A DNA stretch of 64,000 nt, from positions 147,588 through 211,587 of the IMG/VR virus record IMGVR_UViG_3300042289_000986; one strand, given 5' to 3'. Positions 16,696-42,464 of the stretch are shown here, piece after piece. Each line of letters begins with the position of its first letter. Position 1 is the first letter of the stretch. Position numbers and translations under genes: made by a program. The notes below the pieces were generated by a model that was not told the DNA's origin, did no database searches, and worked only from the letters and a program-made list of their open reading frames with translations.

Positions 16696-17574
16696 ATGAA
16701 AAATTACACCTTTGCGTGGGAAATTCAAACTTTATTAGAGCAGTTTGTTTCGGCTTTTAATGATGTAATCATTAAAAGATATGATAAAAACAAAAATGCT
16801 ATCGCTCCAACGAGCGGTTTTAAAGTTAGATATATTTATGCACCAAAACAAAGGGTAATAAATAGTCTAACAACACCCGCACCGGGTGGAATTACTGCAC
16901 CTGTCATTGCTGTTAATATAACAAGTATTTCAAGAGACAATAGTCGCGTGTTTAACAAACATGAAGGGTTTGATGTTGCTTATGTACCCAACGATGGAAG
17001 CGGAACATACGTAAAAAATATACACCAGCCAGTTCCAATTAATATTAGCGTCAATATGACAATATTGACAAAATATCAATCGGATATGGATCAAATTTTA
17101 ACTAATTTTATTCCATATTGTGATCCTTATGTTATTATTTCTTGGAAATTACCAGCAGTATCTAAATCGTCTATTCCATATGAAATAAGATCAGAAATTT
17201 TATGGAGCGGAAATGTTAATTTAAACTATCCAACTGATATATCTCCAACTCAAGCCTTTCGTCTAACAGCAGATACAAGTTTTACAATTAAAGGTTGGCT
17301 GTTTAAAAAGATGGATGAAACTATCAATAAAATTTACACAATACAATCTGATTATTACGATGGAAGGTTATTGGTACAAGATCCTGCAAAATCTCTCATA
17401 CAAAGTTTTGAAGATGTTTTCGGTCCTTGGGAAAATTACCCAGGTACAGAACTTCCACCAGAAGAAATATCTGAACTTCCTCCATTAATTGATGATAATA
17501 TCTCAAATGCATTAATAGCATTCGACGGAGCAATATTAGTTGATATTGAAGGGAACATTTTGATAAATATATAA
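16696..17574 (+). CDS. gp15: Tail sheath stabiliser/tail completion protein (T4 gp15-like) with C-terminal extension
   Basis: FVSAFNDV, YAPKQR, PVPINISVNMTILTKYQSDMDQILTNFIPY, FTIKGWLF. Confidence 0.82.
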   Translation: MKNYTFAWEIQTLLEQFVSAFNDVIIKRYDKNKNAIAPTSGFKVRYIYAPKQRVINSLTTPAPGGITAPVIAVNITSISRDNSRVFNKHEGFDVAYVPNDGSGTYVKNIHQPVPINISVNMTILTKYQSDMDQILTNFIPYCDPYVIISWKLPAVSKSSIPYEIRSEILWSGNVNLNYPTDISPTQAFRLTADTSFTIKGWLFKKMDETINKIYTIQSDYYDGRLLVQDPAKSLIQSFEDVFGPWENYPGTELPPEEISELPPLIDDNISNALIAFDGAILVDIEGNILINI

Positions 17575-17580
17575 TAATAT

Positions 17581-19470
17581 ATGGCACAAAGGAATTTTAC
17601 ACAATTTAGTCCAAGAACTTTTCCTTTAACTGGTGATTATGTCGTTGGTTATAAAAATGATGGTTCAGAAGAAATGCGAACAACCCTTCAGAACATTATT
17701 GATTTAGTTTATAACTCAGAACCAAGAAACTCAAGTGGATTTAGTATTGTTAAAGCCAATTCTTCATTTTGGGCTTATAATGGAACAGATTTAAAACAAC
17801 TTTCTGGTAATTGGCAAAGTACATTCAACACAGTATGCTCTTTATCTACTCTTTGGGATGCACAAGCAGAATTTATTGACTTAACTAATTTTGTAAGCTC
17901 TAATTCTGCTAATTGGGAATATCAAGGAACAGATATTAAAGCCTTAACGGCAAATTGGCAATCAACTTATATCTCAGTTCAAAATAATGGAGGAACCACT
18001 TGGGCTTATAATGGAACAGATGTTAAACAATTAACAGGTAATTGGCAAACAACATATTCAATTGTTAGCAGTAATTCTGCTTTATGGAACTTGGGTGGTT
18101 TCGGTTCTGGAGCAACAGGCGCAACTGGCGCAACAGGTGTCGGAGTAACTGGTGCTACTGGAACACAGGGTCCAATTGGTTCTATCGGACCAACGGGCGC
18201 AGCAGGACCATCTACTTCATATTATGAATTTAAAGCAGATGTTAATGCAACAAATACACCACCAAATGCTGGTACTATTAGATGGAATAATTTAACACAG
18301 TTAAGTGCAACACAAATTCATACAAGTCATTTAACTGATACCTTTCTTGATGTTGATATATTTTTAGCCTTACTTAAAGAAAATGATACATTAATTATTC
18401 AAGATAGAAATAATTCTGCAAATTATCAAAGATGGAGAGTTAATGCAGCACCAATTGTAGCTGATAATAGTTTTATTACATTTCCAGTTACTTTAATAAA
18501 TTCAACAACAACATTTACTAGTAATCAATCTTTAATTTTAGCAGTAGTATCAGCAGGTATAGCTGGACCTACTGGTCCAACTGGACCAACTGGAGCAGGA
18601 CAAACTGGAGCCACAGGACCAACAGGAGCTACTGGTTCAAATTTTAATTATACATCAATTACATTAAATAGAACACTTTCATCGAATGCTGGTTATATTT
18701 TTGATACAACAAGTAGTCCATTAACTGCAACATTACCTTTAAGTCCCGCAATTGGTGATTTTATTAATATAACAGCAACGATTCAACCAGGAAATCTATT
18801 AACTATCGATAGAAATGGTAGTAATATAAATTCTTCTGCTAGTGCTTTAGGTGTTGATATATCAAGTAATTTTTCTTTGGTTTACACAACATCATCTATT
18901 GGATGGAGGTTTATTCCATATTCAGGATTAACAAACCCAACTATTAAAATTTATAAAGCTGTTTGGAATACTCTTCTTACAAATTTAACTGGTACTAGTA
19001 GAATACCATTTACAACAACAGTTGTTAATACAGATCCAGAAATATTTGGTGGAATTACGAATCCTGGCATTTTAGGAGCACAATACATTACCATCAAAAA
19101 AACTGGTTATTATATGATTAATTCTAACCTTCACTTGTATGATTTACAAAACGGTTTGCAATTAATGGTTTCACTTTGGAAAAATGAACCTTCTACTGGA
19201 TACGCAACACCAGTAAAAGTCCAATCAATCGTAGATTTTCAAAGTGGAACAGTTTCACAAGACCAAATTTTATTTGGTAATGCGTTGTTAAACGTAACTC
19301 AAGATGATACTAGAATTTGGTTACAAGTTGAACACAATGGAACAAGTTTAGTTCCACCGATACCTAATGGTGGACCATTCCCATCTCTTAGAGACGTTTT
19401 AGTTGATCCTGCTCCACCAAACCAAACAACTTCAACACCACCAGATATTATCATAACAAAATTAGCATAA
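17581..19470 (+). CDS. Mosaic fibre protein (W-x-Y-x-GTD repeats, collagen segments, gp9/10-like domain, C1q/BclA-like tip)
   Basis: Three WAYNGTDLKQLSGNWQST-type repeats, G-X-T triplets, TLPLSPAIGDFI...LTIDRNG...GW module, KKTGYYMI. Confidence 0.7.
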   Translation: MAQRNFTQFSPRTFPLTGDYVVGYKNDGSEEMRTTLQNIIDLVYNSEPRNSSGFSIVKANSSFWAYNGTDLKQLSGNWQSTFNTVCSLSTLWDAQAEFIDLTNFVSSNSANWEYQGTDIKALTANWQSTYISVQNNGGTTWAYNGTDVKQLTGNWQTTYSIVSSNSALWNLGGFGSGATGATGATGVGVTGATGTQGPIGSIGPTGAAGPSTSYYEFKADVNATNTPPNAGTIRWNNLTQLSATQIHTSHLTDTFLDVDIFLALLKENDTLIIQDRNNSANYQRWRVNAAPIVADNSFITFPVTLINSTTTFTSNQSLILAVVSAGIAGPTGPTGPTGAGQTGATGPTGATGSNFNYTSITLNRTLSSNAGYIFDTTSSPLTATLPLSPAIGDFINITATIQPGNLLTIDRNGSNINSSASALGVDISSNFSLVYTTSSIGWRFIPYSGLTNPTIKIYKAVWNTLLTNLTGTSRIPFTTTVVNTDPEIFGGITNPGILGAQYITIKKTGYYMINSNLHLYDLQNGLQLMVSLWKNEPSTGYATPVKVQSIVDFQSGTVSQDQILFGNALLNVTQDDTRIWLQVEHNGTSLVPPIPNGGPFPSLRDVLVDPAPPNQTTSTPPDIIITKLA

Positions 19471-19479
19471 ATAAAAAAT

Positions 19480-20583
19480 ATGATTACACTTTCAAATTTA
19501 TATCCAATACAAAACATAGGTTTTACTGGACCTACTGGTGGAATCGGACCAACAGGTGCTCAAGGAAACACTGGTAACATTGGGCCAACTGGATCGCAAG
19601 GAAACACTGGTTTAATTGGTCCAACAGGTGCTCAAGGAAATACTGGTTTAATTGGTCCAACAGGTGCTCAAGGAAATACTGGTTTAATTGGACCAACAGG
19701 AACACAAGGAAATACTGGTATAGTAGGACCAACAGGAACACAAGGAAATACTGGCTTAACAGGACCAACTGGTGCAGGAAATACAGGATCAACAGGACCA
19801 ACTGGTATTCAAGGAAACACAGGTGAAACTGGTCCAACGGGTGCTCAAGGAAATACTGGTCCAACTGGTATTCAAGGAAACACAGGTATAATGGGTCCAA
19901 CTGGATCGCAAGGAAACACAGGAGCAACTGGAGCAGGAACAACAGGACCAACTGGTGCAACTGGCACAACATTTGATTATGTATCAATAGAAACAAATAA
20001 TACGCTTTTAAGTTCTAACGAAGGTTTTATTTTTAATACATACACATCACCAATCACCGCAACACTTCCATTAAATCCATTAACTGGTGCATTTATTAAT
20101 ATTACATTTGAAAAATACAGTTCAAATAATTTAACAATTGAAAGAAATGGAAGTAATATCGATGGTGTTGCTGAAGATTTAATTTGTGATGTATCAGGAA
20201 ACTTTTCTTTAATTTATACAAATATTGTAGTTGGTTGGAAATTTATTCCATATTCAGGATTAACATTTGCACCAGCAACTCTAACATTAGATACAGTTAC
20301 TACAAGTAGATCTTTTGAATTAACAGATAGTAGTGAATTTATCACTGCTAATTCTAATAATGCAATTACATTAACTATTCCAGATGATAATTCTGTTAAT
20401 TTTACCAACGGAACACAAATTAGTATACTTCGTTTAAATACAGGAACAGTTGCATTATCTGCTGCAAACGGAGTAACATTAAGAAGTGCAGAAAATAAAC
20501 GCAGCATAAGAGCACAAAATTCTGTTGCTACTGTTGTTAAATTATCTGCCAATGATTGGAGTCTTTTTGGAGATATATCATAA
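19480..20583 (+). CDS. Collagen-like fibre protein
   Basis: Long G-X-Y run (GPT/GAQ/GNT) followed by a domain paralogous to the one in 17581..19470. Confidence 0.75.
19525..19965 (+). repeat. Collagen-coding tandem repeats (36-bp [12 protein letters not shown] units)
   Basis: Near-identical ggtccaacaggtgctcaaggaaatactggtttaatt units. Confidence 0.85.
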
Positions 20584-21287
20584 TGAGAGTATTTTCGGGA
20601 TCTTTAGCAGGATCAAACTCTTTAATAGGTGAAGATCGCGCCATTAATTACGGAGGTTCTTTCGCTGGTGCATCTAATTTTGGCTATGGTTTTGATGCTT
20701 GGGATTTTACATCAACAGGTAATGCGGGTGCGTTTATTGGACCTTCGTTTGGTGGTTTAATAGATACAAACGGTTCTTCTTTTGGATTATATGGTAATGG
20801 AGCAGGAAGTAATTTTATTGATGTAAGAAGAAACCTTCCTGCAAATTTATCGGTAGGATATGCATTATCCGCAGCAATATCTGTCAATTTTAGAAATGGA
20901 AATAAAGGATTTAGTGTTTACCATAATAACACTTGGGATCCCAACCAAGAAGTCTTTAACTTTAATGTAGGATCCAATGATTATATTATTAATGGAGTAG
21001 GAACTGGACAGGCATATTCTTCAACAATGGTTGCAAAGATTGTTTTGAAAAAAACTAATTTAAATTCTTATAGTTATTCTGTTACATTGGGAACAACGAC
21101 ATATACTGCAAATGATATAACACGTAACGGTTATAGTAATATTAGAGGTTTTAAATTTTATATTTCAAATACTGAAGGAGCACCAAATAACGATTTATAT
21201 TTTAACAGTATAAAAGTTTATAAAATAGACGAACCTATCAGTACAATACCAACATCAACATTTACAACTTTTGTGTCTTATGAATAA
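20583..21287 (+). CDS. Putative virion beta-sandwich (lectin-like) protein
   Basis: G/S/N/F-rich beta-type sequence ending NNDLYFNSIKV; start moved to ATG 20583. Confidence 0.5.
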   Translation: MRVFSGSLAGSNSLIGEDRAINYGGSFAGASNFGYGFDAWDFTSTGNAGAFIGPSFGGLIDTNGSSFGLYGNGAGSNFIDVRRNLPANLSVGYALSAAISVNFRNGNKGFSVYHNNTWDPNQEVFNFNVGSNDYIINGVGTGQAYSSTMVAKIVLKKTNLNSYSYSVTLGTTTYTANDITRNGYSNIRGFKFYISNTEGAPNNDLYFNSIKVYKIDEPISTIPTSTFTTFVSYE

Positions 21288-22503
21288 CATTAAAGATATA
21301 GAAAAATTAACACAAAAGCTTTTAGCAGAAACTCCAGAATATGTTCATTCGGTTGGTTATGGTTTTAAAGAAGTTGATGGAAAATTAACAGACGAATTTT
21401 CTATAGTTTTTGGTGTTACAGAAAAAAAACCATTATCATCTATTCCACAAAATGAAATTTTACCATCAACAATAACAACAGAAGATGGTAGTATTTTTAC
21501 TACTGATGTTATTCAAATACCACAAGCTGTTGCATACCCATCTTGCTATGAAATTAGTAATTCAGTTGAACCCGTTTCATTACATAGATCATCTCGAACA
21601 ACATATATCGGTGGAACAAGAATATCAATAGATAATCCATTAAATTTAGGAAACAGTGCATTTACAGGAACTATGGGACTTATCTGTAAAGATCTCACCG
21701 ACAATACTCTTGTTGCATTAACAAATGCACACGTTGCTGCTTATACAGAAAGAGACGCATCTTTATTGTCTTCAAGTTTTAGCAATAGACAAACAACAGT
21801 ATACCAAGCTTTCCCTTGGTCAAATCAATCTACAATGAAATTAAAAAGGTATGTTCCGCTTTTAGCAAGTGGAAACACAATTGATGCAGCAGTTGTAGCC
21901 ATAACAAATTCAAGTAGAGTAAACACACTTACATCTTTTAAACAATTAAATTTAAATTATGGAAATCTTGAATTTGCCACTACCTCTGAAATTGATAATT
22001 TGGTCATAAATAAAAATCCAATTTTTAAATCAGGTGCAACAACTGGTCCTGTTGGATGGCCAGGTTCTATACCTTGGGGTTCTGAATCGTGTTCTCTTAC
22101 TGCTACCCAAGTCGGAGTTTCTGTAGGTGTTAATTTTAGTGGAAATATTTTAAATTTTACATCATGTTTAACTTATAGAGGAACATTTACTGTTGCTAGT
22201 AGTGGTGGAGATTCGGGTAGTGCTGTTTGTGCATTAATAAACCCCGAAAGTCAATCTTTAAGCGCATGGAAAGTGGTTGGTTTAACTTTTGCTGGTTCAG
22301 ATTTAGGAGATAATAGTCCATCGTATGCATGTCGCATCGATAATATTTGTTCTACTTTACAATTAACAGCATGGGATGGTCAAACCACCGCTTTAACAAA
22401 TTTGGGAAATGAAAGAGTTAAATATGTAGAAGGAAAATCATCAGAACCGTTTGTTATAGAAAATGGAAAAAGATATTGGCAGACAGGATTAACCGTTATT
22501 TAA
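21280..22503 (+). CDS. Trypsin-like (S1, Nal1-like) serine protease
   Basis: Catalytic triad motifs LTNAHVA, IDAAVV, GGDSGS; KSGATTG; VGLTFAG. Confidence 0.8.
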   Translation: MNNIKDIEKLTQKLLAETPEYVHSVGYGFKEVDGKLTDEFSIVFGVTEKKPLSSIPQNEILPSTITTEDGSIFTTDVIQIPQAVAYPSCYEISNSVEPVSLHRSSRTTYIGGTRISIDNPLNLGNSAFTGTMGLICKDLTDNTLVALTNAHVAAYTERDASLLSSSFSNRQTTVYQAFPWSNQSTMKLKRYVPLLASGNTIDAAVVAITNSSRVNTLTSFKQLNLNYGNLEFATTSEIDNLVINKNPIFKSGATTGPVGWPGSIPWGSESCSLTATQVGVSVGVNFSGNILNFTSCLTYRGTFTVASSGGDSGSAVCALINPESQSLSAWKVVGLTFAGSDLGDNSPSYACRIDNICSTLQLTAWDGQTTALTNLGNERVKYVEGKSSEPFVIENGKRYWQTGLTVI

Positions 22504-22505
22504 TT

Positions 22506-22844
22506 ATGAAAAACGTAGAAATATATGATCAATATGCAAATGTTTATTTGAATAATCAAACTAATGAATTAGTTGTATTAAATTTAAATTATAATGAAGA
22601 ATTAGATACAAGTTTATATACTTTGGTTCATTCTAGTTCTGGTTTTGTTATATCAAAAGGTGAAAATTTAAACACGGAAAGTGCATTAAGTTTAGTCGAA
22701 GAACTTTATGTAGAATCCCAAAATTTAGGAGAAAATTATCAAGAAAAAAATATAAATTTAGAAAATGGCTACGTGGAAATGATTATATCTTTCAATGACG
22801 GTAAAAAACTTAATAGAGTTATCTATATTAAGGATAATTTATAA
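22506..22844 (+). CDS. Hypothetical acidic protein
   Basis: ORF directly after the protease; start moved to ATG 22506. Confidence 0.5.
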   Translation: MKNVEIYDQYANVYLNNQTNELVVLNLNYNEELDTSLYTLVHSSSGFVISKGENLNTESALSLVEELYVESQNLGENYQEKNINLENGYVEMIISFNDGKKLNRVIYIKDNL

Positions 22845-22868
22845 TGTAAAGTGATAAATATTTAGAAT

Positions 22869-24320
22869 ATGGCTTTATTATCTGAAAAATATCCAATTAC
22901 TCAGTCTACAGGACCAACAGGTTCAACAGGAGCAACTGGTGCTGGCCAAACTGGTGCTACTGGAAACACTGGTATAGTAGGACCAACTGGAGCACAAGGA
23001 AATACTGGTGATATTGGACCAACAGGCTCTCAAGGAAACACAGGTATAGTAGGCCCAACTGGAGCACAAGGAAATACTGGTGATATTGGACCAACAGGCT
23101 CTCAAGGAAACACAGGTATAGTAGGCCCAACTGGAGCACAAGGAAATACTGGCCAAACAGGTTCGCAAGGAAACACTGGCGCAACTGGTAATGATGGATC
23201 AACTGGTCCTACAGGTTCAGGAAACACAGGAGCAACAGGTCAAACTGGAGCACAAGGAAATACAGGTGATATCGGTCCAACTGGAGCACAAGGAAATACA
23301 GGCCAAACTGGTGCTCAAGGAAATACAGGCATAGTGGGTCCAACTGGAACACAAGGAAATACAGGTGCAACAGGATCCACTGGTTTAGCAGGAGACAAAT
23401 ATACTACAACATCAACTACTAATACAAACATAGCCACAGGGTCAAAAACATTCACTGTTGATAGTGGTCTTGCTTATAGTATAGGACAATCTGTAATAGT
23501 TTCTTTTGATTCTTCTAATAAAATGGAAGGATCTGTTACAAGTTATTCTGGTACAACATTGATTGTAGATGTAACAACAATTACAGGTTCTGGAACATAT
23601 AATAGTTGGAGCGTAAGCTTGTCTGGAGCACCTGGACCCGCTGGTTTAACAGGCGCAACGGGAGCCACTGGTACTAATGGTACGAATGGAACAACTGGAG
23701 CAACAGGTGCTACTGGTACGGATGGAACAACAGGCGCAACGGGAGCCACTGGTACTAATGGTACGAATGGAACAACTGGAGCAACAGGTGCTACTGGTAC
23801 GGATGGAACAACAGGCGCAACAGGTGCTACTGGTACGAATGGAACAAACGGATCAACTGGATCAACTGGAACAACAGGAACTACTGGTGATTCCGCTTGG
23901 AAAATATTTGATATGAGTTTTGATTACGGTGAATATGATGTAAATAACGTTGTTACAAATGCAATTATTAGCAATGCTATAGTCACAATTCCATCTTGTG
24001 TCTTAATGGATAATACCAGCAATACTCATGCAAGCGCAAACGTAAACATAAGACTTGTAATCTTACAAGAGTATGGAGGAATTACAAACATGACATATGA
24101 TATACTTGCATATTCTGGAGGAAGTCCAACTGTTTATACTCCAACACTAACACAATTTACAACAAATGGACCCAATAATGCTGCTACAGAGCATGTTATT
24201 GGTAACTGGTTTACCCATAACATATCTGCACAAGGTACAACATTTCAACTAAGAGCATCTCGAAACGCTAATGGTTTTACAAGAATTAAAAAAGTTTATT
24301 TACAAGTTAGGAAAAACTGA
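22869..24320 (+). CDS. Collagen-like fibre protein
   Basis: Two G-X-T-rich collagen runs separated by a beta domain ([17 protein letters not shown]...[10 protein letters not shown]). Confidence 0.75.
22905..23890 (+). repeat. Collagen-coding repeats including 63-bp and 81-bp direct duplications
   Basis: [21 protein letters not shown] units at about 22970-23150; 81-bp unit at 23649 and 23730. Confidence 0.8.
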
Positions 24321-24332
24321 TAAATTAATAAT

Positions 24333-24548
24333 ATGGCATATTTTGATACAGAATTAAATGAAGCATGGGCATGGTTTGCGGTAAACTGGGAATTGTGGAT
24401 AAATTTAAATACATCACTAACTGATGGTTTAAAATTTGTGTTTGATAATACTGGTGGACCATCTGGACCGCATAAAGAAACACATTGGCAGTGGGTTAGA
24501 AATAATAGAGAAGAATTATTAAATTTATACAATTCTTTAAAGAACTAA
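24333..24548 (+). CDS. Small Trp-rich hypothetical protein
   Basis: 71-aa ORF following a fibre gene. Confidence 0.5.
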   Translation: MAYFDTELNEAWAWFAVNWELWINLNTSLTDGLKFVFDNTGGPSGPHKETHWQWVRNNREELLNLYNSLKN

Positions 24549-26539: not shown

Positions 26540-26569
26540 TTATATAGTATATTTTAATATAAATAAAAA

Positions 26570-27472: not shown

Positions 27473-27473
27473 T

Positions 27474-27683: not shown

Positions 27684-27685
27684 AA

Positions 27686-28381
27686 TTAAGATATTTTTAT
27701 TACATGAAAATAAGGTCTGGTTCCATATGAATTTTCAAAAACAGGAAAACCACCAGTTCCAGGAGTAGGTGTAGTAATAACTGCTGTTCCTCCAGTATGG
27801 AAAAATGTTGCAACTATATAATAAGGAACTGCATTAACATCCAATATAAATGTACCTCTTCTTTGGGCAGCAGCGTTATTAGATGTTCCGACAATGCCAT
27901 CACCGATTGTATCAATTAAAGTTCCGCCGACTGTTGTAGTTATTGGCGTTGATTGTTGTCCTCTTAATCTTAATCTTAGTGTTGCTCCAGTTGGATTATT
28001 TAAATCATAAGAAGCATATCTAATATCTATTAAATATCTTCCAGTTTGTTTTAAAATCATGTTATTTAAAGTAGCATCTGCTTCAATGATATTCGTATTT
28101 GTTTGAAGTGTTACTGCATTCCAATCAACAATATATTCAACACTATTATATGTATTTACTAATCCAGCATTTGATGTTATTTCCATTTCGGCGGCTGGAA
28201 ATGATACAGCACCACTAGACCAACTAGCAGAATTTTGTCTTACGAAAGTTGTTACAGGTAAACCATTAGAAAAATTTATATAATTAATTTTTTTAGTTGT
28301 GCCATTATTTACAATAGGCAAAACATCAGTATTCGCGGGTTGACTTATTTCTAATAATTGAGATATTTTTTTATCAGCCAT
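27686..28381 (-). CDS. Fibre tip protein (MADKKISQL N-terminus; C-terminal domain paralogous to 26570..27472)
   Basis: QTGRYLIDIRYASYD...FPVFENSYGTRPYFHVIKIS matches the downstream paralog. Confidence 0.65.
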   Translation of the reverse strand: MADKKISQLLEISQPANTDVLPIVNNGTTKKINYINFSNGLPVTTFVRQNSASWSSGAVSFPAAEMEITSNAGLVNTYNSVEYIVDWNAVTLQTNTNIIEADATLNNMILKQTGRYLIDIRYASYDLNNPTGATLRLRLRGQQSTPITTTVGGTLIDTIGDGIVGTSNNAAAQRRGTFILDVNAVPYYIVATFFHTGGTAVITTPTPGTGGFPVFENSYGTRPYFHVIKIS

Positions 28382-28420
28382 AATATTATTTATTCGTTTT
28401 TTTCATTTTTAAAGAACAAA

Positions 28421-29251
28421 TCAAGGAGGGGGTAATACAGGTGTATCATCTTGCATAAGTCTGTCATTATCTTCAGTTAATATATATCCAAACATATTAT
28501 CTAATAACAAACCAAACAATGTAGTTGATACATATTGTTGTGGTTGATTTAAATCAAACAACTCAGTAGAACCAAAAAATGTATTATTAACATTAGTCAG
28601 TGTAATTTTTGTTATTTTTCCAGTAATTGTTAAAACGTAATTTGATTCTCCAATATTATTAAAATATGTATTTGTTGGAAATTGATGTAAAATATCATCA
28701 TTTGAACCCCATATATTTTCACCACCACTTAAATAAAAAATAATTGTTTTTCCAGTTGTAAAATTAACATAAGAATATACTTCTCCTTGAACGACACTCC
28801 GAAAAAACACATTTCCTTTGGAAGCATCAATAATATATGATCCTCCTGAAGATAAGGAAAAAGAAGTAACTACATTAGAATAAGTCCAAAAAGATGAATT
28901 AGTGTTTACTAAAGAATAAACACTGTTCCAATTAGAACTTAATGCACAAACAGTACTTGTCGAAGATGTCCATTGTGAACTTAAATTCCCAACTAAAGTT
29001 AAATCAGCACTATTACCACCAGTACCCGTTGATTTTAAAATTAAATCGGTGTTTTGTATACCATTTTTATACCAATATTCAGTTACACCAACACCAACAG
29101 CAGAAACACCTACCGTTAAACCAATTCTTCTGACATTTGGGTTAATATTATCATTGGCATCATTAATAGAAGACCAAGGACCGTAACGCGAATCTACGTT
29201 CGCATATGGATCAACTAAATAAATTGGTGCTGATAAGTTAAAAGTACTCAT
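28421..29251 (-). CDS. Fibre-associated structural protein
   Basis: N-terminal NVDSRYGPW...EYWYKNGI module shared with 29253..31148; C-terminal ILTEDNDRLMQD. Confidence 0.65.
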   Translation of the reverse strand: MSTFNLSAPIYLVDPYANVDSRYGPWSSINDANDNINPNVRRIGLTVGVSAVGVGVTEYWYKNGIQNTDLILKSTGTGGNSADLTLVGNLSSQWTSSTSTVCALSSNWNSVYSLVNTNSSFWTYSNVVTSFSLSSGGSYIIDASKGNVFFRSVVQGEVYSYVNFTTGKTIIFYLSGGENIWGSNDDILHQFPTNTYFNNIGESNYVLTITGKITKITLTNVNNTFFGSTELFDLNQPQQYVSTTLFGLLLDNMFGYILTEDNDRLMQDDTPVLPPP

Positions 29252-29252
29252 T

Positions 29253-33883: not shown

Positions 33884-33884
33884 A

Positions 33885-36869
33885 TTAGATAGTTATAATA
33901 TAAGAAGTTGCCGATCCAAACGGAATTAAAGGTGTGAAATAATACACTCTATAATTAGTTGGAAAAAGATTGTTTGCAGCAGATACGCTGACTGTTGTTT
34001 GTGTAAATGTAGTTTTTACATCGCTTTGAAGCGGTGGATAGAAAATTGTAGTTACTGCTTGAAGAGATGCAGGATATGCAAGTATGACTCTGTTTGCTCC
34101 TGCTGGAACATTTATAGTGAATTGACTTCCATTTTGAGGGTTTAAAAGATTTTGAGTTAAAGCTCTTACTTGTGGTGAAGTTGTTGGTACAAAATTTTGA
34201 ACATCGGCCCCAAAAAATGCTCTTCTTCTACCGTTTAAAGTCATGGATGTCGATACACTATTTTCTGGATCTGGAGTTAGATATATATTATTTCTACTAT
34301 CGTATGGCTGATCACCTTGTCCATAATTACAGGTAACATTATAAACGTTTGATCCATCTAAAATAATTGCTTGAGCAGATGTAGTTGTAAATGTAGAATT
34401 TGTTGTATTTGTTGCGGAGCTAAAAGCAACATAACTCGTTGCTGGACCCGTTCTAAAATTCTGAAACGTATTTGGTTCCCATATACTATTAACAGTTTTA
34501 CCAACAATTTGTCCGCGAGTATAATTTAATGTTAATTGAACTGATGTTGTTCCTATTTCTACGTTTGTTCCATTACCACCATGATTACTTGTAACTGTTA
34601 ACGTTCTGTTTGTAAAAGTTGGATAATAAATTTTTGTTAAAAGTGCTTGAACAAATTGTTGAAAAGTTGTTCCTGCATTAAAAACCTGTGCAGCAGTTAT
34701 TGCACCCACAGACAAATCACTTGTTACGGTAGATGTTAATTTTCCTAAATTTGACCAATCCGAACTTAATCCAGTAGCCAATGAATATATTGAACTCCAA
34801 CTGGCACTGTTTGTATTAACTGTTGTATTTAAGCTAATAATATTAGAACTATTATTGTTTACAAAAGTCCTTGCTGCTAAATCCAAACCACTATTTTGAT
34901 TCAAAGTCGTATAAGAACTATTCCAATTTGCAGATAAACTAAAAACAGTATTATAAACACTATTATCGGCACTAGTAGTTTGTACAAAATTTTGAACTTC
35001 TAATAAGTTTCCACTATTTTGATTCCACGTAGTATAAGCACTATCCCAGTTCGCACTAGTATTATTAGTGACAGAATTTACGGCTAAAATATTTGAACTA
35101 TTACTGTTTACAAAAGTCCTTGCTGCTAAATCCAAACTACTATTTTGATTCCAAGTAGTATAAACACTGTTCCAATTTGTTGATAATGAACAAACAGTAT
35201 TATAAACACTATTGTTAGCACTTGTAGTTTGTACAAAATTTTCAACTGCTTTTAAATTTGAACTAAGATTATTCCAGCTACTATAAACACTATCCCAATT
35301 TCCACTTGTGGTGTTAACTTTAGTGTTAACATTAATAATATTTGAACTGTTTGTGTTTACAAAAGTCCTTGCTGCTAAATCTAAACCACTATTTTGATTC
35401 CAAGTAGTAAAAGAACTATTCCAGTTAGCACTAGTGTTGTTAGTGACAGAATTTACTTGTAATATATTTGAACTGTTTGTGTTTACAAAAGTCCTTGCTG
35501 CTAAATCTAAACCACTATTTTGATTCCACGTAGTATAAGCACTATCCCAGTTCGCACTTGTTGAGTTTACTTTAGTGTTAACATTAATAATATTTGAACT
35601 ATTACTGTTTACAAAACTTCTTGCGGCTAAATCAAATGCACTGTTAGAATTCCAGCTACTATAAACACTATCCCAATTTCCACTCGTTTGAATGACTTTA
35701 CTATTAACTTGTAAAGAATTTGAACTATTATTGTTTACAAAACTTCTTGCGGCTAAATTCAAACCACTATTTTGATTCCAAGTAGTATAAACACTGTCCC
35801 AGTTCGCACTCGTTTGATTGACTTTACTATTAACTTGTAAAGAATTTGCGCTGTTATTATTAACAAAAGTTCTTGCGGCTAAATCAAATGCACTATTAGA
35901 ATTCCAGCTACTATAAACACTATTCCAGTTGGCACTAGTATTGTTAGTAAGTGAATTTACTTGTAATATGTTTGAACTATTTGATAAAACAAAACTTACG
36001 ATTTCATTTTGATCTTCTTCGTTTGCACTAGTTTGATTAATATATGAATAAACACTATTCCATAAATTGGAATTTCCACCTAAAGCATAGATGACATTTG
36101 TTGAGCTTAAAATTGCACTAGTAGAAAGATTACCAATTAAATAACCCCCACTTAGTGGCAAATATCCAGTAACAATATTGACTAAATTACCACCTGCTGC
36201 ATAAGATGCTGAATTTGCTAAAAGATTTGTATAAGCTTGTTGCCAAAACGATGAGTTACTACGAGTTGTACTATAAACAGAATTCCAAATAGCAGCACTG
36301 ACTGTTGAAAGATTAACATAAAATGAAGAACTTTTGGAAATGTTTGTAAATGATTGATTCCAATTTTCATAATTTGAAAGAACTTGTTGTGAAGTAAAAA
36401 TCCAGTTTGCGGAGTTGGTTATTACTAAATTTCCAACAGGTCCAAATTTTAAAATTTTATTTGCAGTGTCAACATAAAATGCATCCTGTGCAGCACTAAC
36501 TAAAGATAAATCACTTTGGTTGGCTTTTAATGCCAAAGCTGTAATTTGTGCTAAAGAAAGAGGCTTATTTAAATCACTGGTATTATCAACTTGATCTAAA
36601 CCAATTTCATCTTTAGTTATGATTACATGACCAATTTTTCCATTAACACTAAAAACAAAACCACCTTGATTTATGTTTATTGTTTCGTTTATATTTAAAT
36701 CCGTTGGATTAATTGAAACGTTTGGTGAAGAAATAGAACTAACGTTTATTATAGATGTATCAATACCATCATTTACATTTACAGATTGATTGGTTGTATT
36801 TGGGTTTGCATTTATTACAACCAAATCTGTAGATGATGGATTAACATTTACTATAATTGAATCACTCAT
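33885..36869 (-). CDS. Asn/Ser/Trp-rich repeat fibre protein
   Basis: About 42-aa repeats (SANWDSVYTTWNQNSGLDLAARTFVNTNSSNI..VN); SVNGKIGHVIITKDEIGLDQVDNTSDLNKP fibre motif. Confidence 0.7.
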   Translation of the reverse strand: MSDSIIVNVNPSSTDLVVINANPNTTNQSVNVNDGIDTSIINVSSISSPNVSINPTDLNINETININQGGFVFSVNGKIGHVIITKDEIGLDQVDNTSDLNKPLSLAQITALALKANQSDLSLVSAAQDAFYVDTANKILKFGPVGNLVITNSANWIFTSQQVLSNYENWNQSFTNISKSSSFYVNLSTVSAAIWNSVYSTTRSNSSFWQQAYTNLLANSASYAAGGNLVNIVTGYLPLSGGYLIGNLSTSAILSSTNVIYALGGNSNLWNSVYSYINQTSANEEDQNEIVSFVLSNSSNILQVNSLTNNTSANWNSVYSSWNSNSAFDLAARTFVNNNSANSLQVNSKVNQTSANWDSVYTTWNQNSGLNLAARSFVNNNSSNSLQVNSKVIQTSGNWDSVYSSWNSNSAFDLAARSFVNSNSSNIINVNTKVNSTSANWDSAYTTWNQNSGLDLAARTFVNTNSSNILQVNSVTNNTSANWNSSFTTWNQNSGLDLAARTFVNTNSSNIINVNTKVNTTSGNWDSVYSSWNNLSSNLKAVENFVQTTSANNSVYNTVCSLSTNWNSVYTTWNQNSSLDLAARTFVNSNSSNILAVNSVTNNTSANWDSAYTTWNQNSGNLLEVQNFVQTTSADNSVYNTVFSLSANWNSSYTTLNQNSGLDLAARTFVNNNSSNIISLNTTVNTNSASWSSIYSLATGLSSDWSNLGKLTSTVTSDLSVGAITAAQVFNAGTTFQQFVQALLTKIYYPTFTNRTLTVTSNHGGNGTNVEIGTTSVQLTLNYTRGQIVGKTVNSIWEPNTFQNFRTGPATSYVAFSSATNTTNSTFTTTSAQAIILDGSNVYNVTCNYGQGDQPYDSRNNIYLTPDPENSVSTSMTLNGRRRAFFGADVQNFVPTTSPQVRALTQNLLNPQNGSQFTINVPAGANRVILAYPASLQAVTTIFYPPLQSDVKTTFTQTTVSVSAANNLFPTNYRVYYFTPLIPFGSATSYIITI
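34800..35980 (-). repeat. About 126-bp coding tandem repeats
   Basis: Recurrent acaaaagtccttgctgctaaatc / acaaaacttcttgcggctaaat units. Confidence 0.8.
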
Positions 36870-37255
36870 TGTGGAATAGGCGAATGTTCAGGTATTTGTG
36901 TCATTACCTCCCAATAATTTTGAGGAAGATTTGAAACAATTGGCCAATGACCCATGAGATATGTTTTTACTTCATTGTTTTGTAATTTTAATCGAATACG
37001 CCATTTATACAAATCAACAGGAATGTTTACCGTGGTGGCTGGAACTGATATTGTTCCATTTAATGGGTTTGTTATTAAAACACCGCTATTTGAAGAATTT
37101 AATGAAAAAACAACAGGACTGTCAATTGATCTTAAAACTTCCATTTCAACAAATGCATTTGTAAGATTTAATGCAGAGTTGTTTCTTTGAAAAGTTATAC
37201 TGTTAATACCTTCCCAAGTATCACCAGTTATGTGTGGCGGAATATCATAAGTCAT
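36866..37255 (-). CDS. BppU-N-like Ig-fold adaptor protein
   Basis: GDTW...ALNLTNAFVEMEV...ITNPLNGTI...YKWRI...VKTYLMG pattern. Confidence 0.55.
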   Translation of the reverse strand: MTYDIPPHITGDTWEGINSITFQRNNSALNLTNAFVEMEVLRSIDSPVVFSLNSSNSGVLITNPLNGTISVPATTVNIPVDLYKWRIRLKLQNNEVKTYLMGHWPIVSNLPQNYWEVMTQIPEHSPIPQ

Positions 37256-37289
37256 ATTCTATACTTATGATTTTAAACTGTATATTTGA

Positions 37290-39158
37290 TTAGCTTGCTG
37301 TAGGAATTGTAGGAGTTTCTGATGCTGCCGTTTCTGGTGCTGCTGTTTCTCCTCCACCTTCCGTTCCAGCTTCTGCTTCAGGGGTTTCTGCTGCTTCTCC
37401 ACCGCCAGTTTCACCAAATTCTGGTATTTCGGATGCACTTGTTCCACCACCACCAGAATCAAGTCCACCGCCTTCTGTAGATGCATCTTCTGCTGCTTGA
37501 ATGTGTTCTCTCCAATTTGGACCTGTTGTTGCAATTTGTTCCAATTCCCATTTCAATGCTGCATCCTTTCTTAACCATTCCATATTTTCACTTATACGAG
37601 AATCATTATATTCCAGATAATGTCTTTGAGCAAAAGTTTTTGATATAGATTCGTTTTGACACATATCATTGAAAATTTTGAATTTTAATTCAAATTCTTG
37701 ATTTTTGCGAATAGCAAAGAAGTTTGATGGTGGATTAAATTCTAAATTAAAGTAAGATTCGTGAAGTTTGTAATCTTTCCACCAGTTTCTTATTTTTAAA
37801 TGTGTAATAAATGCGTTTTTAATTCCTTCTGCAAATTGACTTTGTAAACGGACAATAAATTTTGCAAAACGGAGTTCCTCTCTTAAAATTTCTGCACCAT
37901 CTTTGTAACCTTCTTCAGGATTTAATCTGGTTAAAGGAACTTTTAAACTTTTATAAAGTTTATTGACAAAATACATCAAGTCTTTAAGCTCTCCAAGGTT
38001 TTGTCCACCTTGCATTAACTCTACGTCTGATCCTTGTTCTCCAGAACGCTTGGCAAACCAATATGAGTCTAACATTGATTGTGGATCATATATATTTGCT
38101 GCTCCCGATTGTCCCTTATTACTATCGTAAGATTTTTTATTCCAATAAGATTGCATTAACTGGCGCAAATATGCTTCTGCTTTTGCTGGTGGCATATTTC
38201 CGACATCAATTTTGAATTTTAATCTTTCAGGGGCACGAACCATTCTATAAATAACAATAGAGTCTTCAATCAAAGAAAGTTGTTTATATGCTCTTCTTGC
38301 GTTTTCAATAAAAGGAACTCGCATCGTCATATCCTCATTCCATAAACCAGAATTTACATATGTTACTTGGTTTCCTTGAAACGTCACAATTTGTTGTTGT
38401 AAAGCATTTGCTGGAGTTGGTGGTTGGAAGTTGGATTGGCTTAATTGGGCCGCTGGATTTTGTTGTAAACTAATTGGTTTTTGAAAAACAAAATTTTGTA
38501 CAACGTTGTTTTGAACATTATCATATACCGGATTTATTAATTCAGAAGGAACACTCAAAACACCAATAATACCAAGTTCTTTTTTTGCTTCATGGATAAT
38601 ATTTTCAAAAAATACTTCTCCTTCTACTAATAATTGACGACAATATCCCCAACCTTTATTTTCAAAATCAAAAACATTTACGAACTTGTAAAATTCTTTT
38701 TCGAGTTCGCTTCTTTCTTTATTTTCTAATTTAGAAAAACTAGAAAATTGAATTTTTATAACTTTTCCATTTTCATCTTTATTGACAAATTCATCACAAA
38801 TTTCATCTAAACAATCGCCAACTTCAGCATAAGCTGCCATTCTTCTATATTCAGCCAATCTTCTTGTCTTATCAGTATCTACTTGGGCATAAATGTATTT
38901 GTGATAAGCTTGATCTGAAACAAAACTATTTGGACTATATGAGTCACCAACATCCTTCATATAAGGACCTGTGATGACAGATTGTTGCATCAACCTTAGT
39001 TCTTTTCTTTTAGAAAGACGGTCAAATAATTCATATCTTGGATTATTAACGTCAGCTTCTATTGTTTGTTGAACATAAGGAAGTTTTGATAAAATTGAAG
39101 AAACAAAACTTCTACCAGTATCTGGTTGACGGTTACTTGTTTGGAAAAAATCTGCCAT
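37290..39158 (-). CDS. gp20: Portal vertex protein (T4 gp20)
   Basis: YKQLSLIEDSIVIYRMVRAPERLKFKIDVGNMPPAKAEAYL, SMLDSYWF, YFVNKLYKSLKVP, ILREELRFAKFI. Confidence 0.96.
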   Translation of the reverse strand: MADFFQTSNRQPDTGRSFVSSILSKLPYVQQTIEADVNNPRYELFDRLSKRKELRLMQQSVITGPYMKDVGDSYSPNSFVSDQAYHKYIYAQVDTDKTRRLAEYRRMAAYAEVGDCLDEICDEFVNKDENGKVIKIQFSSFSKLENKERSELEKEFYKFVNVFDFENKGWGYCRQLLVEGEVFFENIIHEAKKELGIIGVLSVPSELINPVYDNVQNNVVQNFVFQKPISLQQNPAAQLSQSNFQPPTPANALQQQIVTFQGNQVTYVNSGLWNEDMTMRVPFIENARRAYKQLSLIEDSIVIYRMVRAPERLKFKIDVGNMPPAKAEAYLRQLMQSYWNKKSYDSNKGQSGAANIYDPQSMLDSYWFAKRSGEQGSDVELMQGGQNLGELKDLMYFVNKLYKSLKVPLTRLNPEEGYKDGAEILREELRFAKFIVRLQSQFAEGIKNAFITHLKIRNWWKDYKLHESYFNLEFNPPSNFFAIRKNQEFELKFKIFNDMCQNESISKTFAQRHYLEYNDSRISENMEWLRKDAALKWELEQIATTGPNWREHIQAAEDASTEGGGLDSGGGGTSASEIPEFGETGGGEAAETPEAEAGTEGGGETAAPETAASETPTIPTAS

Positions 39159-39234
39159 GATTATATTATATTTAGTCTGACTTATAAGTAATCAATGTTT
39201 TTTGTTTATTAAAGAATAAGTATTCAAAATTAGC

Positions 39235-39780
39235 ATGGCAAACACTTATATTCACACATTACCAGATGTTTTAGCAACTGATCCTAATGCATATACTATT
39301 TTAGATTATGAAAATCAATTTGAAGAATATGTAACAGCAAAAGTTACTCTTGCATCTTTAGCTAATTTTACAAACAATACATTTTTAAATAGTACACCAT
39401 ATTTAAATAGTCTTTCTGCTACAACATACGTAGAAAACAATAGCGCAAACATTCAAGGAATTTCAAATGTCGTAAATTCGTTTAGTTCAAACAGTATTAA
39501 TGTTAATACTTTTGTTAATAGTAATAGTTCAAATATACAATCTGTTTATACTCATTATAATTCACAAAGTGCTAATTTTGCGACTAGAAACTATGTCAAT
39601 GGCGGGTTTTTACCGCTGTCTGGTGGAGATGTTATTGGTGAATTGTTTGCTACACAATATGGAGTAGGAAACACAGTAATTGTCGATGGAACGTTGGGTA
39701 CGGTTGTTAGAAAAATGCAAATATTTGATATAAATGGCGCTTCTATAGGATTTATCCCAATTTATAATTCTATAACTTAA
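39235..39780 (+). CDS. Short fibre-like structural protein
   Basis: N/S repeats and ATRNYVNGGFLPLSGG motif shared with the other fibre genes. Confidence 0.6.
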   Translation: MANTYIHTLPDVLATDPNAYTILDYENQFEEYVTAKVTLASLANFTNNTFLNSTPYLNSLSATTYVENNSANIQGISNVVNSFSSNSINVNTFVNSNSSNIQSVYTHYNSQSANFATRNYVNGGFLPLSGGDVIGELFATQYGVGNTVIVDGTLGTVVRKMQIFDINGASIGFIPIYNSIT

Positions 39781-40334
39781 ACCAAATAAGAAATTGTTAT
39801 TTGTTGGTTTGTATCTGAAGTTAAAATAAATTTATTATCAGAAGCAACTAAAACAAATTCAACCATAAAATCCAACGGATCAATAACTTGGACACCGGAA
39901 ACACATGGAAGCTGTATATCTACTGCTCCAACAAATGAACTAACAAACGGGACACGACTATCTCTACTAAGTTTACCATATCCTGCTTCGTTTTCTATAA
40001 TAATATCAAAAAAACCATCTCTCTTTGGGGTTTGCGGTATTGTAAATGCTAGATATTTTTCTTTATAAATATAAAAAGGAACTTTAATTCCTTCAAACGG
40101 TAAATTTGATGCAGATAAGTTTTTAACAGCAGAAAAAGGATTCCAAATAGTTGTTCCTTCAAACATAACTTCATTATCAGGAACTAAATACACTGCTCTT
40201 ATATCAAAAAAATTATTACCTTTAACTAAAATGTTAAAATTTTGAACAGATGTCAAAAGCGGGTTAGTAACTACAAATTTATAAGGCTTAACATCGGTAA
40301 TTTTTGGTTTTCCGTGAATAAAAAAGCGATCCAT
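39777..40334 (-). CDS. IPT/TIG-like Ig-fold structural protein
   Basis: PKITDVKP...VKGNNF...FDIIIENEAGY. Confidence 0.55.
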   Translation of the reverse strand: MDRFFIHGKPKITDVKPYKFVVTNPLLTSVQNFNILVKGNNFFDIRAVYLVPDNEVMFEGTTIWNPFSAVKNLSASNLPFEGIKVPFYIYKEKYLAFTIPQTPKRDGFFDIIIENEAGYGKLSRDSRVPFVSSFVGAVDIQLPCVSGVQVIDPLDFMVEFVLVASDNKFILTSDTNQQITISYLV

Positions 40335-42436: not shown

Positions 42437-42464
42437 ATGTAATTTAAAAAGATAAATATATAAT

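What the first reader, a model, noticed from the sequence alone, without database searches (positions are those of the whole stretch)
16696..40334. Second docking pair: C-terminal 'L-x-x-[DE]-x-[GN]-x-x-[LI]' tails next to genes starting 'MA-x-x-x-[IF]-[ST]-Q-[LF]'
Seen: gp15 has an extra tail (ALIAFDGAILVDIEGNILINI) and is followed by 17581 (MAQRNFTQF...GDYVVGY). 28421 ends LLLDNMFGYILTEDNDRLMQD and is followed by 27686 (MADKKISQL...TDVLPIV..GTTKKI). 39777 ends LVASDNKFILTSDTNQQI and abuts 39235 (MANTYIHTLP...TAKVT). 61106 also begins MAEIRTKLITQLP...EILPM..GVTRKL. Inference: a short beta-hairpin hook grafted onto core proteins recruits fibres with the matching N-terminal domain, which would hang a collagen fibre from the tail-completion/neck region.
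Basis: partly seen in the sequence, partly recalled or inferred. Interest (0 to 1): 0.62.

Follow-up and report, generated by a model that had tools for sequence, protein, structure and literature searches.

The report
Two-part connector for phage fibres
Several virion proteins of this T4-like phage, including the neck protein gp15, end in a short repeat tail and are followed by a fibre gene that starts with a matching 40-residue domain; the same pairing occurs in many unrelated phages, so it is probably a portable connector that fixes fibres to the virion.

Summary
All the quoted sequences are present. The window is the last 64 kb of a 211.6-kb T4-like phage. Two of the three claimed pairs are real and general.

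- **Type I pair:** 28421 (tail YILTEDNDRLMQD) followed by 27686 (MADKKISQL..DVLPIV..TTKKI).
- **Type II pair:** gp15 (tail ALIAFDGAILVDIEGNILINI) followed by collagen fibre 17581 (MAQRNFTQF..GDYVVGYK).

**Outside support.** In unrelated IMG/VR contigs, the gene directly upstream of an N-domain gene ends in such a tail in 20 of 66 cases. Only 1 of 273 other ORFs does (p 8e-15). The carrier proteins fall into 13 unrelated groups. Tail type tracks N-domain type even where the carriers are homologous. A cultured case is Erythrobacter phage ZS04.

**Weaker items.** The third pair (39777/39235) is convergent and not recognised by the outside models. 61106 has a clear type I domain but no tail-bearing neighbour.

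**Interpretation.** Comparative genomics supports docking. Binding itself is untested, and the co-fold gave no answer. In relatives gp15 is fused to, or followed by, the 39777-like protein, and in one contig that protein carries the tail and precedes the fibre. This supports fibres at the neck.

Neither module is in Pfam, NCBIfam or PDB, and PHROGs has no family for the type I domain or the carriers. I rate it a new variant of known fibre-docking systems.

The parts
16696..17574 (+). gp15 tail sheath stabiliser / tail terminator, 292 aa. Core is aa 1-224.
   Evidence: PF16724 E 1.6e-19 and phrog_227. T4 gp15 structures 4HUH/3J2M at E 3e-6. AF2 core pLDDT 70-90.
17368..17505 (+). gp15 extension, aa 225-270: a conserved proximal strand (DGRLLVQD...) followed by a poorly conserved Pro/Glu-rich linker.
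   Evidence: Identity to L004: 95% for aa 225-246, 30% with indels for aa 247-270. pLDDT is mostly below 50 from aa 211 on.
17506..17571 (+). Type II tail of gp15 (ALIAFDGAILVDIEGNILINI), two octad repeats at the extreme C-terminus.
   Evidence: Top hit of the external type II tail model among 292 proteins, though at a weak 5.6 bits. Kept in L001-L004. 56% identity to L004 with the hydrophobic pattern retained.
17581..17715 (+). Type II N-domain of the collagen-like fibre (MAQRNFTQF..GDYVVGYKNDG..EEMRTT).
   Evidence: External type II model: 76 bits, E 2e-23, the only hit in the genome.
17581..19470 (+). Collagen-like fibre, 629 aa.
   Evidence: G-X-Y runs, phrog_6320 tail fibre E 9e-17.
28421..29251 (-). 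Carrier protein, 276 aa. It has an N-terminal 'RYGPW' domain shared with 29253 and with the L157 carrier, plus fibre-like SxNW repeats.
   Evidence: BLAST to the L157 carrier E 3e-16.
28424..28519 (-). Type I tail of 28421 (LFGLLLDNMFGYILTEDNDRLMQD, then DTPVLPPP).
   Evidence: Top hit of the external type I tail model among 292 proteins, 11.9 bits.
28256..28381 (-). Type I N-domain of 27686 (MADKKISQLLEISQPANTDVLPIVNNGTTKKINYINF).
   Evidence: External model 72.5 bits, E 3e-22. AF2 pLDDT about 90 for aa 1-40, with a hairpin at 20-33 and a helix at 34-39.
27686..28381 (-). Short fibre, 231 aa, carrying the type I N-domain. Its C-terminal end resembles that of collagen fibre 26570.
39777..40334 (-). 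Neck-module protein, 185 aa. In relatives its homologue follows gp15 or is fused to it.
   Evidence: 25 homologues next to gp15; fusions in L014, L018, L019, L022, L023, L030, L031.
39780..39863 (-). Candidate tail of 39777 (EFVLVASDNKFILTSDTNQQITISYLV). Membership is doubtful.
   Evidence: Not in the top 14 of either external tail model. Homologues in L026/L029 carry clear type I tails and L159 carries a type II tail.
39235..39378 (+). Divergent N-domain-like start of fibre 39235 (MANTYIHTLPDVLATDPNAYTILDYEN..TAKVT).
   Evidence: Type I model 7.4 bits, E 0.06, rank 4. Type II model 3.6 bits, not significant. Convergent with 39777.
61106..61240 (+). Type I N-domain of the long fibre 61106. No tail-bearing gene lies next to it.
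   Evidence: 16.9 bits, E 6e-5. Upstream proteins 60682 and 54029 end without the motif.

Best explanation
The region holds members of a widespread two-part connector.

Part one is a C-terminal tail on a protein already built into the virion. It consists of two or three repeats of about eight residues (hydrophobic-hydrophobic-L-x-E/D-D/N-G/D-x), often at the end of a flexible linker. Part two is a domain of about 40 residues at the very start of a fibre, usually encoded by the next gene.

I infer that the tail forms a beta-hairpin or short meander that pairs with the exposed beta-hairpin of the N-domain and so fixes the fibre to its carrier.

There are two cognate kinds:
- Type I: LLQEDG-like tails with MADKKISQL..D-h-LP-h-V..TKK-h domains. 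Here this is 28421 followed by 27686.
- Type II: IL-x-I-x-GD-x-I-x-x-I tails with MA..FT-x-F..GDY-h-VGYK domains. Here this is gp15 followed by collagen fibre 17581.

Because gp15 caps the tail at the neck, 17581 would be a neck fibre or whisker.

Shown: the association, the co-variation of types, the modularity and the autonomous fold of the N-domain. Inferred: binding, the geometry, the copy number, and where the fibres sit on the virion.
For: 1. Enrichment. A tail model trained only on this phage clade scores at least 5 bits on 20 of 66 non-redundant ORFs directly upstream of N-domain genes in unrelated IMG/VR contigs. It does so on 1 of 273 other ORFs (odds ratio 118, p 8e-15). Gaps between the two genes run from -1 to 39 nt.
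2. The reverse test. Tail models trained only on outside contigs rank the 28421 tail (type I) and the gp15 tail (type II, a weak 5.6 bits) first among all 292 proteins of this genome. Each lies directly before the matching N-domain type.
3. Modularity. The carriers fall into 13 BLAST-unlinked groups of 77-830 aa, and the fibre bodies into 13 groups.
4. Type switching. The L157 carrier is homologous to 28421 (E 3e-16, same gene position after a 29253-like gene). It bears a type II tail and precedes a type II fibre. 39777-like proteins bear type II tails (L159) or type I tails (L026/L029).
5. Co-variation. Tail similarity and N-domain similarity correlate: Mantel r 0.66 for one pair per family (p 2e-4) and r 0.41 within type I (p 0.006).
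6. Conservation pattern. Against L004, the gp15 linker is 30% identical, the tail 56% and the fibre N-domain 62%, while the fibre's C-terminal 269 aa are 99% identical.
7. Fold. AF2 folds N-domain aa 1-40 at pLDDT about 90 as a hairpin plus helix.
8. Neck context. gp15::39777-like fusions occur in relatives, and L159 has the order gp15, 39777-like protein with tail, fibre.
9. Cultured example. The tail protein of Erythrobacter phage ZS04 ends DLRLTEDGDVRATEAGDLRVLEA directly before MATKKISELVAAS....
Against: - No direct evidence of binding exists. The single co-fold job gave no answer.
- 46 of 66 N-domain genes in the sample have no tail-bearing gene directly upstream. Examples are Cyanophage KBS-S-2A and the tandem fibres of L010/L038.
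- Some tails are not next to an N-domain gene: L026/L029 tails precede the portal gene, and L008-type gp15 tails precede gp13.
- In L036 the motif sits at the N-terminus of the gene after gp15.
- Adjacent genes share history, so the Mantel correlation alone does not prove contact.
- The AF2 hairpin in the gp15 tail has pLDDT about 30.
- The tail models are short and score low (5-12 bits).
Confidence: 0.7

Rival explanations
1. The tail and the N-domain are conserved gene-boundary cassettes. They serve as homology patches for recombination that shuffles fibre genes, and they do not bind each other.
For: They sit exactly at gene junctions. Carriers and fibre bodies are mosaic. The C-terminal 269 aa of 17581 are 99% identical to L004 while the N-domain is 62% identical, which shows recent exchange nearby.
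Against: Conservation is in the amino-acid pattern, while the sequences themselves are only 20-60% identical, too diverged for DNA homology patches. The N-domain folds confidently as a domain. Tails also occur away from N-domain genes. The type match holds within homologous carrier families. The two roles are not exclusive.
Confidence: 0.1
2. The tails act on something other than the neighbouring fibre. They might be a self-association cap, a strand given to the sheath or neck ring, or a site for an assembly chaperone. They lie near N-domain genes only because both are common in fibre modules.
For: Many gp15 relatives have a single conserved strand right after the core (DSIILTEL, DGNLLTYLN; internal SEILIDIDD in the fusions) with no fibre gene next to it. 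The window's gp15 keeps this proximal strand too (DGRLLVQD, 95% conserved). The L036 motif is N-terminal.
Against: The enrichment is specific to the ORF immediately upstream and is not seen in other ORFs of the same loci (1 of 273). Tail type follows N-domain type. The proximal strand is a separate element from the distal double repeat.
Confidence: 0.15
3. Chance resemblance of short, low-information motifs.
For: A looser double pattern hits about 45 of 291 genome proteins. The 39777 and G000 23111 tails are not recognised by the outside models.
Against: Fisher p 8e-15 in independent loci. Rank-1 hits of outside models fall exactly on the predicted partners.
Confidence: 0.03

Closest known systems
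Branched receptor-binding proteins of Klebsiella podophages (KP32, K11, KP34): the T4gp10-like branching domain of RBP1 and the conserved N-terminal docking peptide of RBP2 (PMC6872550; PMC13352976)
   Same: A short conserved N-terminal element on an exchangeable fibre or spike docks on a dedicated element of a protein already in the virion. The genes are adjacent and the system is modular.
   Different: There the socket is an internal T4gp10-like domain. Here it is a repeat tail of about 20 residues at the extreme C-terminus of very diverse carriers. No Pfam family was found in the carriers or fibres scanned apart from gp15's own and a sub-threshold collagen match. The N-domain sequences are unrelated. 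Two cognate types exist here.
RcGTA / roseophage R4C baseplate: the C-terminal fibre-binding domain of the megatron protein holds the N-terminal extension of the trimeric tail fibre (PMC10276861)
   Same: The C-terminal part of a large tail protein binds the N-terminus of the fibre. In R4C the fibre is encoded by the next gene.
   Different: That socket is a domain of about 300 residues, and the fibre's N-terminal region is a coiled-coil rod. The N-domain profile finds no chain in the PDB.
T4 fibritin (wac) whiskers and collar at the neck (own knowledge of the T4 neck; not tested here)
   Same: Fibres attached at the head-tail junction of a T4-like myovirus.
   Different: As I recall, fibritin is a coiled-coil fibre held at the gp13/gp14 neck, without a gp15 tail. 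Here the fibre is collagen-like and the proposed hook is a C-terminal extension of gp15.
T7 gp17 N-terminal domain on the gp11/gp12 adaptor-nozzle, and the K1E/K1-5/SP6 adaptor protein with its short N-terminal tailspike peptides (own knowledge)
   Same: A conserved N-terminal anchor allows the distal receptor-binding part to be swapped.
   Different: Different folds and sequences. The anchor there is about 150 residues (T7), or the adaptor is a separate protein. No Pfam family of any kind was found in the N-domain proteins' anchor region.

Membership tests
T4 gp15 tail sheath stabiliser / tail terminator (PF16724) | Profile match above the curated cut-off | tested here: met
   16696-17574: 70.5 bits against a cut-off of 25, E 1.6e-19, aa 10-224. 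phrog_227 E 3.5e-19.
T4 gp15 tail sheath stabiliser / tail terminator (PF16724) | Sequence similarity to the solved T4 gp15 | tested here: met
   4HUH/3J2M at E 3e-6, aa 103-224 aligned to T4 aa 102-220.
T4 gp15 tail sheath stabiliser / tail terminator (PF16724) | Position in the neck gene module (with gp13, gp14, portal) | tested here: inconclusive
   In relatives gp15 lies next to the portal or gp13. In the window it is 22 kb away from them, on the other strand from the portal.
Type I fibre N-domain (defined here: MADKKISQL..D-h-LP-h-V..T-K-K-h) | Significant match to a profile built from unrelated contigs, at the very N-terminus | tested here: met
   27686 at E 3e-22, 61106 at E 6e-5, G000 22204 at E 7e-8. 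39235 reaches only E 0.06. 17581 is not significant.
Type II fibre N-domain (defined here: MA..FT-x-F..GDY-h-VGYK-x-DG..E-h-K-T) | Significant match to a profile built from outside contigs | tested here: met
   17581 at 76 bits, E 2e-23, the only hit in the genome. 39235 at 3.6 bits, not significant.
One superfamily joining type I and type II N-domains | Profile-profile similarity | tested here: inconclusive
   hhalign probability 47%, E 2e-4, colinear over 39 columns from Met1.
Repeat tail (defined here) | Match to tail profiles built from outside contigs, at the extreme C-terminus | tested here: met
   28421 ranks first for type I (11.9 bits). gp15 ranks first for type II (5.6 bits). 39777 and G000 23111 are not in the top 14.
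Repeat tail / N-domain docking pair | Physical binding of the tail to the N-domain | not testable with these tools
Pull-down or cryo-EM is needed.
Klebsiella-type anchor-branch RBP system | A T4gp10-like branching domain in the carrier | tested here: not met
   No Pfam hit in 28421, 39777 or eight outside carriers.
Collagen-like phage fibre (17581) | G-X-Y triple-helix repeats | tested here: met
   G-X-Y runs at aa 174-212 and 317-354 can be read directly. PHROG collagen-like tail fibre families reach 9e-17. Pfam Collagen is below its cut-off (15.8 bits against 27.2).

The most novel reading that the evidence does not exclude
The tail and the N-domain are the two halves of a portable split connector with at least two orthogonal specificities. 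It is used by contractile- and long-tailed phages of many hosts to hang fibres on almost any structural protein: neck terminator, neck Ig-like protein, baseplate fibres, tail tip proteins, or small adaptors. If so, the wiring of fibres on a virion could be read from sequence alone, and this phage carries collagen whiskers hooked on gp15.
Probability: 0.5. Interest if true: 0.8.

Novelty: new variant of a known kind. Interest (0 to 1): 0.68.

Why it matters
Most fibre genes of environmental phages are unannotated, and nothing in their sequence says where on the particle they sit. A connector that can be recognised from sequence would allow three things:
- Fibres and their carriers could be annotated in thousands of uncultured phages. 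The type I pattern alone matched at least 600 stretches in IMG/VR.
- Virion architecture could be predicted, for example neck fibres in T4-like phages that lack fibritin.
- Fibre modules could be seen to swap while keeping their attachment.

It would also add a small natural pair of orthogonal docking modules to the known anchor-branch systems. Neither module is in Pfam, NCBIfam or the PDB, and PHROGs has no family for the type I domain or the carriers scanned.

Tried and rejected
- **Co-fold.** Three copies of 27686 aa 1-75 with three copies of 28421 aa 227-276, using my own alignments, scored 0.02 against a mark of 0.32. The verdict was 'no answer', and this is evidence neither for nor against binding. 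The cap is one job, so gp15/17581 and 1:1 stoichiometry were not tried.
- **Word-based protein search.** 27686 aa 1-45 found only two near-identical proteins.
- **The search for related loci with whole 27686.** No relatives.
- **PDB sequence searches.** The N-domain profiles and 39777 gave nothing.
- **Foldseek of the N-domain model against PDB.** Nothing significant. The only phage-related row was Agrobacterium phage Milano 8fqc_S1: 35 columns, rmsd 2.2, E 7.4. I treat it as a lead only.
- **tblastn of the 28421 tail and of the L064 carrier against cultured phages.** Nothing usable.
- **Full-text search for the tail peptides.** No phage paper.
- **Natural fusions of tail and N-domain in one reading frame.** None among 107 loci.
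Rejected as too loose and replaced by profiles trained on outside data.
- **The large representative-protein search.** Not run, because IMG/VR already showed the family is large.
Full report
**Setting.**
The window is bases 147,588-211,587 of a 211,587-bp IMG/VR virus record with terminal repeats. GC content is about 30%. It is a T4-like myovirus. Family scans identify:
- gp15, the tail sheath stabiliser (16696-17574)
- the portal gp20 (37290-39158, minus strand)
- gp13 (40409) and gp14 (41271)
- the prohead protease, scaffold and major capsid protein (41765-45084)
- gp25 and gp6 baseplate proteins (47600-49946)
- four collagen-like fibres (17581, 19480, 22869 and 26570)

No close relative exists among cultured phages.

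**Observation.**
All quoted peptides are present.
- gp15 matches Pfam PF16724 up to residue 224 and T4 gp15 structures up to residue 224. Residues 225-292 are an extension ending ALIAFDGAILVDIEGNILINI.
- 17581 starts 6 nt downstream of gp15.
- 28421 ends LFGLLLDNMFGYILTEDNDRLMQDDTPVLPPP and lies 39 nt before 27686.
- 39777 and 39235 are convergent and overlap by 4 nt.
- 61106 has no tail-bearing neighbour.

The relaxed C-terminal pattern hits 20 of 64 window proteins.

**The N-terminal domain is a real and large family.**
- Cyanophage KBS-S-2A has two annotated tail fibre proteins that begin MANVKITDL..TDVLPIV..TKKV and MADARISQLP..ADIIPF..TRKI.
- A search of IMG/VR with a three-sequence alignment matched at least 600 stretches. 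Of these, 146 were confirmed and 80 kept as L063-L142.
- A profile built only from 23 of these outside sequences was scored on the first 60 residues of all 292 proteins of the genome. It gave 27686 at E 3e-22, a gene outside the window (G000 22204-23094, minus strand) at E 7e-8, 61106 at E 6e-5, 39235 at E 0.06 (rank 4), and 17581 not significant.
- 17581 belongs to a second subfamily, MA..FT-x-F..GD[YF]-h-VGYK-x-DG..E-h-K-T, with 27 loci (L143-L169). An outside profile of it scores 17581 at E 2e-23 and nothing else in the genome.
- The two profiles align end to end from Met1 (hhalign E 2e-4, probability 47%). They have the same layout, and common descent is likely but unproven.
- AF2 with a 55-row alignment folds residues 1-40 of 27686 at pLDDT about 90. 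The model has a short turn at ISQL, a beta-hairpin at 20-33 and a helix at 34-39.
- Pfam and NCBIfam hold no family for either domain, and the PDB holds no chain that matches the domain profiles. PHROGs gave nothing for 27686, 39235 and an outside type I fibre.

**The tails recur directly upstream of these domains in unrelated phages.** Examples:

| Locus | Upstream protein | C-terminal end |
|---|---|---|
| L063 | 827 aa | YILLEDEIGYLLQEDDSVLVESTTLI |
| L064 | 102 aa | GYLLQEDDFYILQEDGDKVYL |
| L070, L073, L080 | about 100 aa | YMVTENDDFLMTEDNNNLIT |
| L078 group | about 740 aa | YDYILLENDAYMLQENGSSRFYI |
| L093 | about 80 aa | GFLLQENNDYLLQENNDRILL |
| L094 | 103 aa | NLLCENGDNLVQEDGGLILLE |
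| L122 | 819 aa | SYILQEDDELLVSNLQVLY |

- The gaps to the fibre gene run from -1 to 39 nt.
- A tail profile trained only on this phage's own clade scored at least 5 bits on 20 of 66 non-redundant upstream C-termini. It did so on 1 of 273 other ORFs in the same loci (odds ratio 118, p 8e-15). That one exception is itself a tail-bearing protein 1.7 kb upstream of the fibre gene in L074.
- Type II fibres are preceded by a different tail flavour that ends I-x-x-I: L157 GDILLSIGGDNIIEI, L159 ILSIDGSFLVTISGDYIVQI, L162 LLGELLLTFEDEIIKEI, L164 and L169.
- In the reverse test, tail profiles trained only on outside contigs were scanned over all 292 full-length proteins of this genome. The 28421 tail ranked first for type I (11.9 bits) and the gp15 tail ranked first for type II (5.6 bits). 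Each lies directly before the matching N-domain type.
- A cultured example is Erythrobacter phage ZS04. Its tail protein ends DLRLTEDGDVRATEAGDLRVLEA, followed with no gap by MATKKISELVAAS...

**Modularity and co-variation.**
- With the last 30 residues removed, 21 carriers fall into 13 BLAST-unlinked groups. With the first 50 residues removed, the fibres fall into 13 groups.
- Where carriers are homologous, the tail type still follows the fibre. The L157 carrier shares the RYGPW N-terminal domain with 28421 (E 3e-16) and the same position after a 29253-like gene, yet it has a type II tail and a type II fibre.
- 39777-like proteins carry type II tails (L159) or type I tails (L026, L029).
- Tail similarity and N-domain similarity correlate: Mantel r 0.82 for all 25 pairs, 0.66 for one pair per family, and 0.41 within type I (p 0.006). 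Adjacent genes share history, so this shows joint inheritance or transfer as a unit. It does not show contact.
- Between the window and L004, the gp15 core is 83% identical, the proximal strand 95%, the linker 30% with indels, the tail 56% and the fibre N-domain 62%. The fibre's last 269 residues are 99% identical.

**Neck context.**
- In relatives the order is gp15, 39777-like protein, portal. In seven contigs the first two are one fused protein. So 39777 is a gp15-associated neck protein.
- L159 has gp15, then a 39777-like protein with a type II tail, then a type II fibre.
- L036 carries the motif at the N-terminus of the gene after gp15, followed by a type II fibre.
- The slot after gp15 also holds proteins of 537 aa (L036) and 833 aa (L017) with other domains. 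It looks like a hot spot for neck appendages.
- AF2 models gp15 residues 211-292 at low confidence, mostly pLDDT below 50, with a weak hairpin at 280-290. That is compatible with a flexible arm but proves nothing.

**Limits.**
- Adjacency is not obligatory. 46 of 66 sampled N-domain genes lack a tail-bearing gene directly upstream, and some tails precede the portal or gp13.
- The records of L010 and L038 hold three tandem type I fibres 27 kb from a tail-bearing gp15.
- The third pair of the finding rests on appearance and on its relatives only.
- A possible fourth pair lies outside the window. G000 23111-23431 (minus strand) ends FNLETILANLDTGDAEILL, 16 nt before the type I fibre 22204-23094. 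That tail is not recognised by the outside models either.

**Mechanism.**
The most likely mechanism is beta-sheet pairing of the tail hairpin with the N-domain hairpin, giving a composite small domain. Specificity would be set by the two types. Trimeric fibres would collect three tails, which means two fibres per gp15 hexamer if the ratio is 1:1. All of this is inference.

**Comparison with known systems.**
The closest known systems are:
- Klebsiella branched RBPs, with a T4gp10-like domain and a conserved N-terminal peptide (PMC6872550, PMC13352976)
- the megatron fibre-binding domain of RcGTA and R4C (PMC10276861)
- T7 gp17 and SP6-type adaptors, and T4 fibritin (own knowledge)

The logic is the same. 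The parts differ: the sequences, the size of the socket, its C-terminal position, the diversity of carriers and the two types. I found no description of this pair in the papers searched.

**Verdict.**
This is a real feature, a new variant of a known kind. Confidence in docking is about 0.7, and in the neck-fibre reading about 0.55.

Noticed in passing
window 39777-40334 (-); L014, L018, L019, L022, L023, L030, L031: The 185-aa protein 39777 is a conserved neighbour of gp15 in relatives and is fused to gp15 in seven contigs. In L020 a single stop separates the two parts (the gp15 ORF runs into ..ISARPQF). This looks like gene fission or fusion at the neck.
   Followed up: partly
window 16696-40334: Relatives have the order gp15, 39777-like, portal on one strand. 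Here gp15 (+) is 22 kb from 39777 (-). A fibre cassette lies at 17581-24320 (+), and the block 24537-40334 is on the other strand. This suggests an inversion plus an insertion.
   Followed up: no
window 17581-19470 vs L004 4895-6766: The fibre is mosaic. The C-terminal 269 aa are 99% identical to L004, while the N-domain is 62% identical and aa 46-175 are 58% identical. This suggests recent exchange of the receptor-binding end.
   Followed up: partly
window 39235-39780 vs L059 1753-3429: The same fibre is 181 aa here and 558 aa in L059. The N-terminal region and the last 144 aa are shared. The middle consists of SxN-type repeats, so the fibre differs in length between lineages.
   Followed up: no
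window 28421-36869 (-): 28421 and 29253 share an N-terminal 'RYGPW' domain. 29253, 31145 and 33885 share a C-terminal end (..RPYK.Y..T..P....). They form a paralogous set of large structural proteins with no PHROG function.
   Followed up: no
G000 22204-23431 (-), outside the window (L062): A further type I N-domain fibre (296 aa, E 7e-8) is preceded at 16 nt by a 106-aa protein ending FNLETILANLDTGDAEILL. This may be a fourth pair.
   Followed up: partly
L170 (Flavobacterium phage vB_FspS_sniff9-1, gp70): The annotated minor tail protein has an N-domain-like segment inside it (aa ~105-140, ..LTDATTPLSGTEEIPIVQSGVTKKV) and a tail-like KYWLFEDSEIGLF near its start. Both modules may therefore be in one chain. 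This protein could not be folded under the tool rules.
   Followed up: no
window 61106-64000 and G000 45-1106: The long fibre 61106 runs off the end of the record into the terminal repeat. It carries many tandem repeats (SSDWNTSFNRST and units of about 90 aa).
   Followed up: no
window 54029-60637 (+): A 2202-aa protein follows the gp6-like and a 1346-aa baseplate-region protein. It was not put through any family scan. It ends in a Cys-rich stretch.
   Followed up: no
L036 4714-6327; L122 2-2461: Proteins with RCC1-like repeats act as carriers (L122, phrog_16766) or occupy the slot after gp15 (L036).
   Followed up: no
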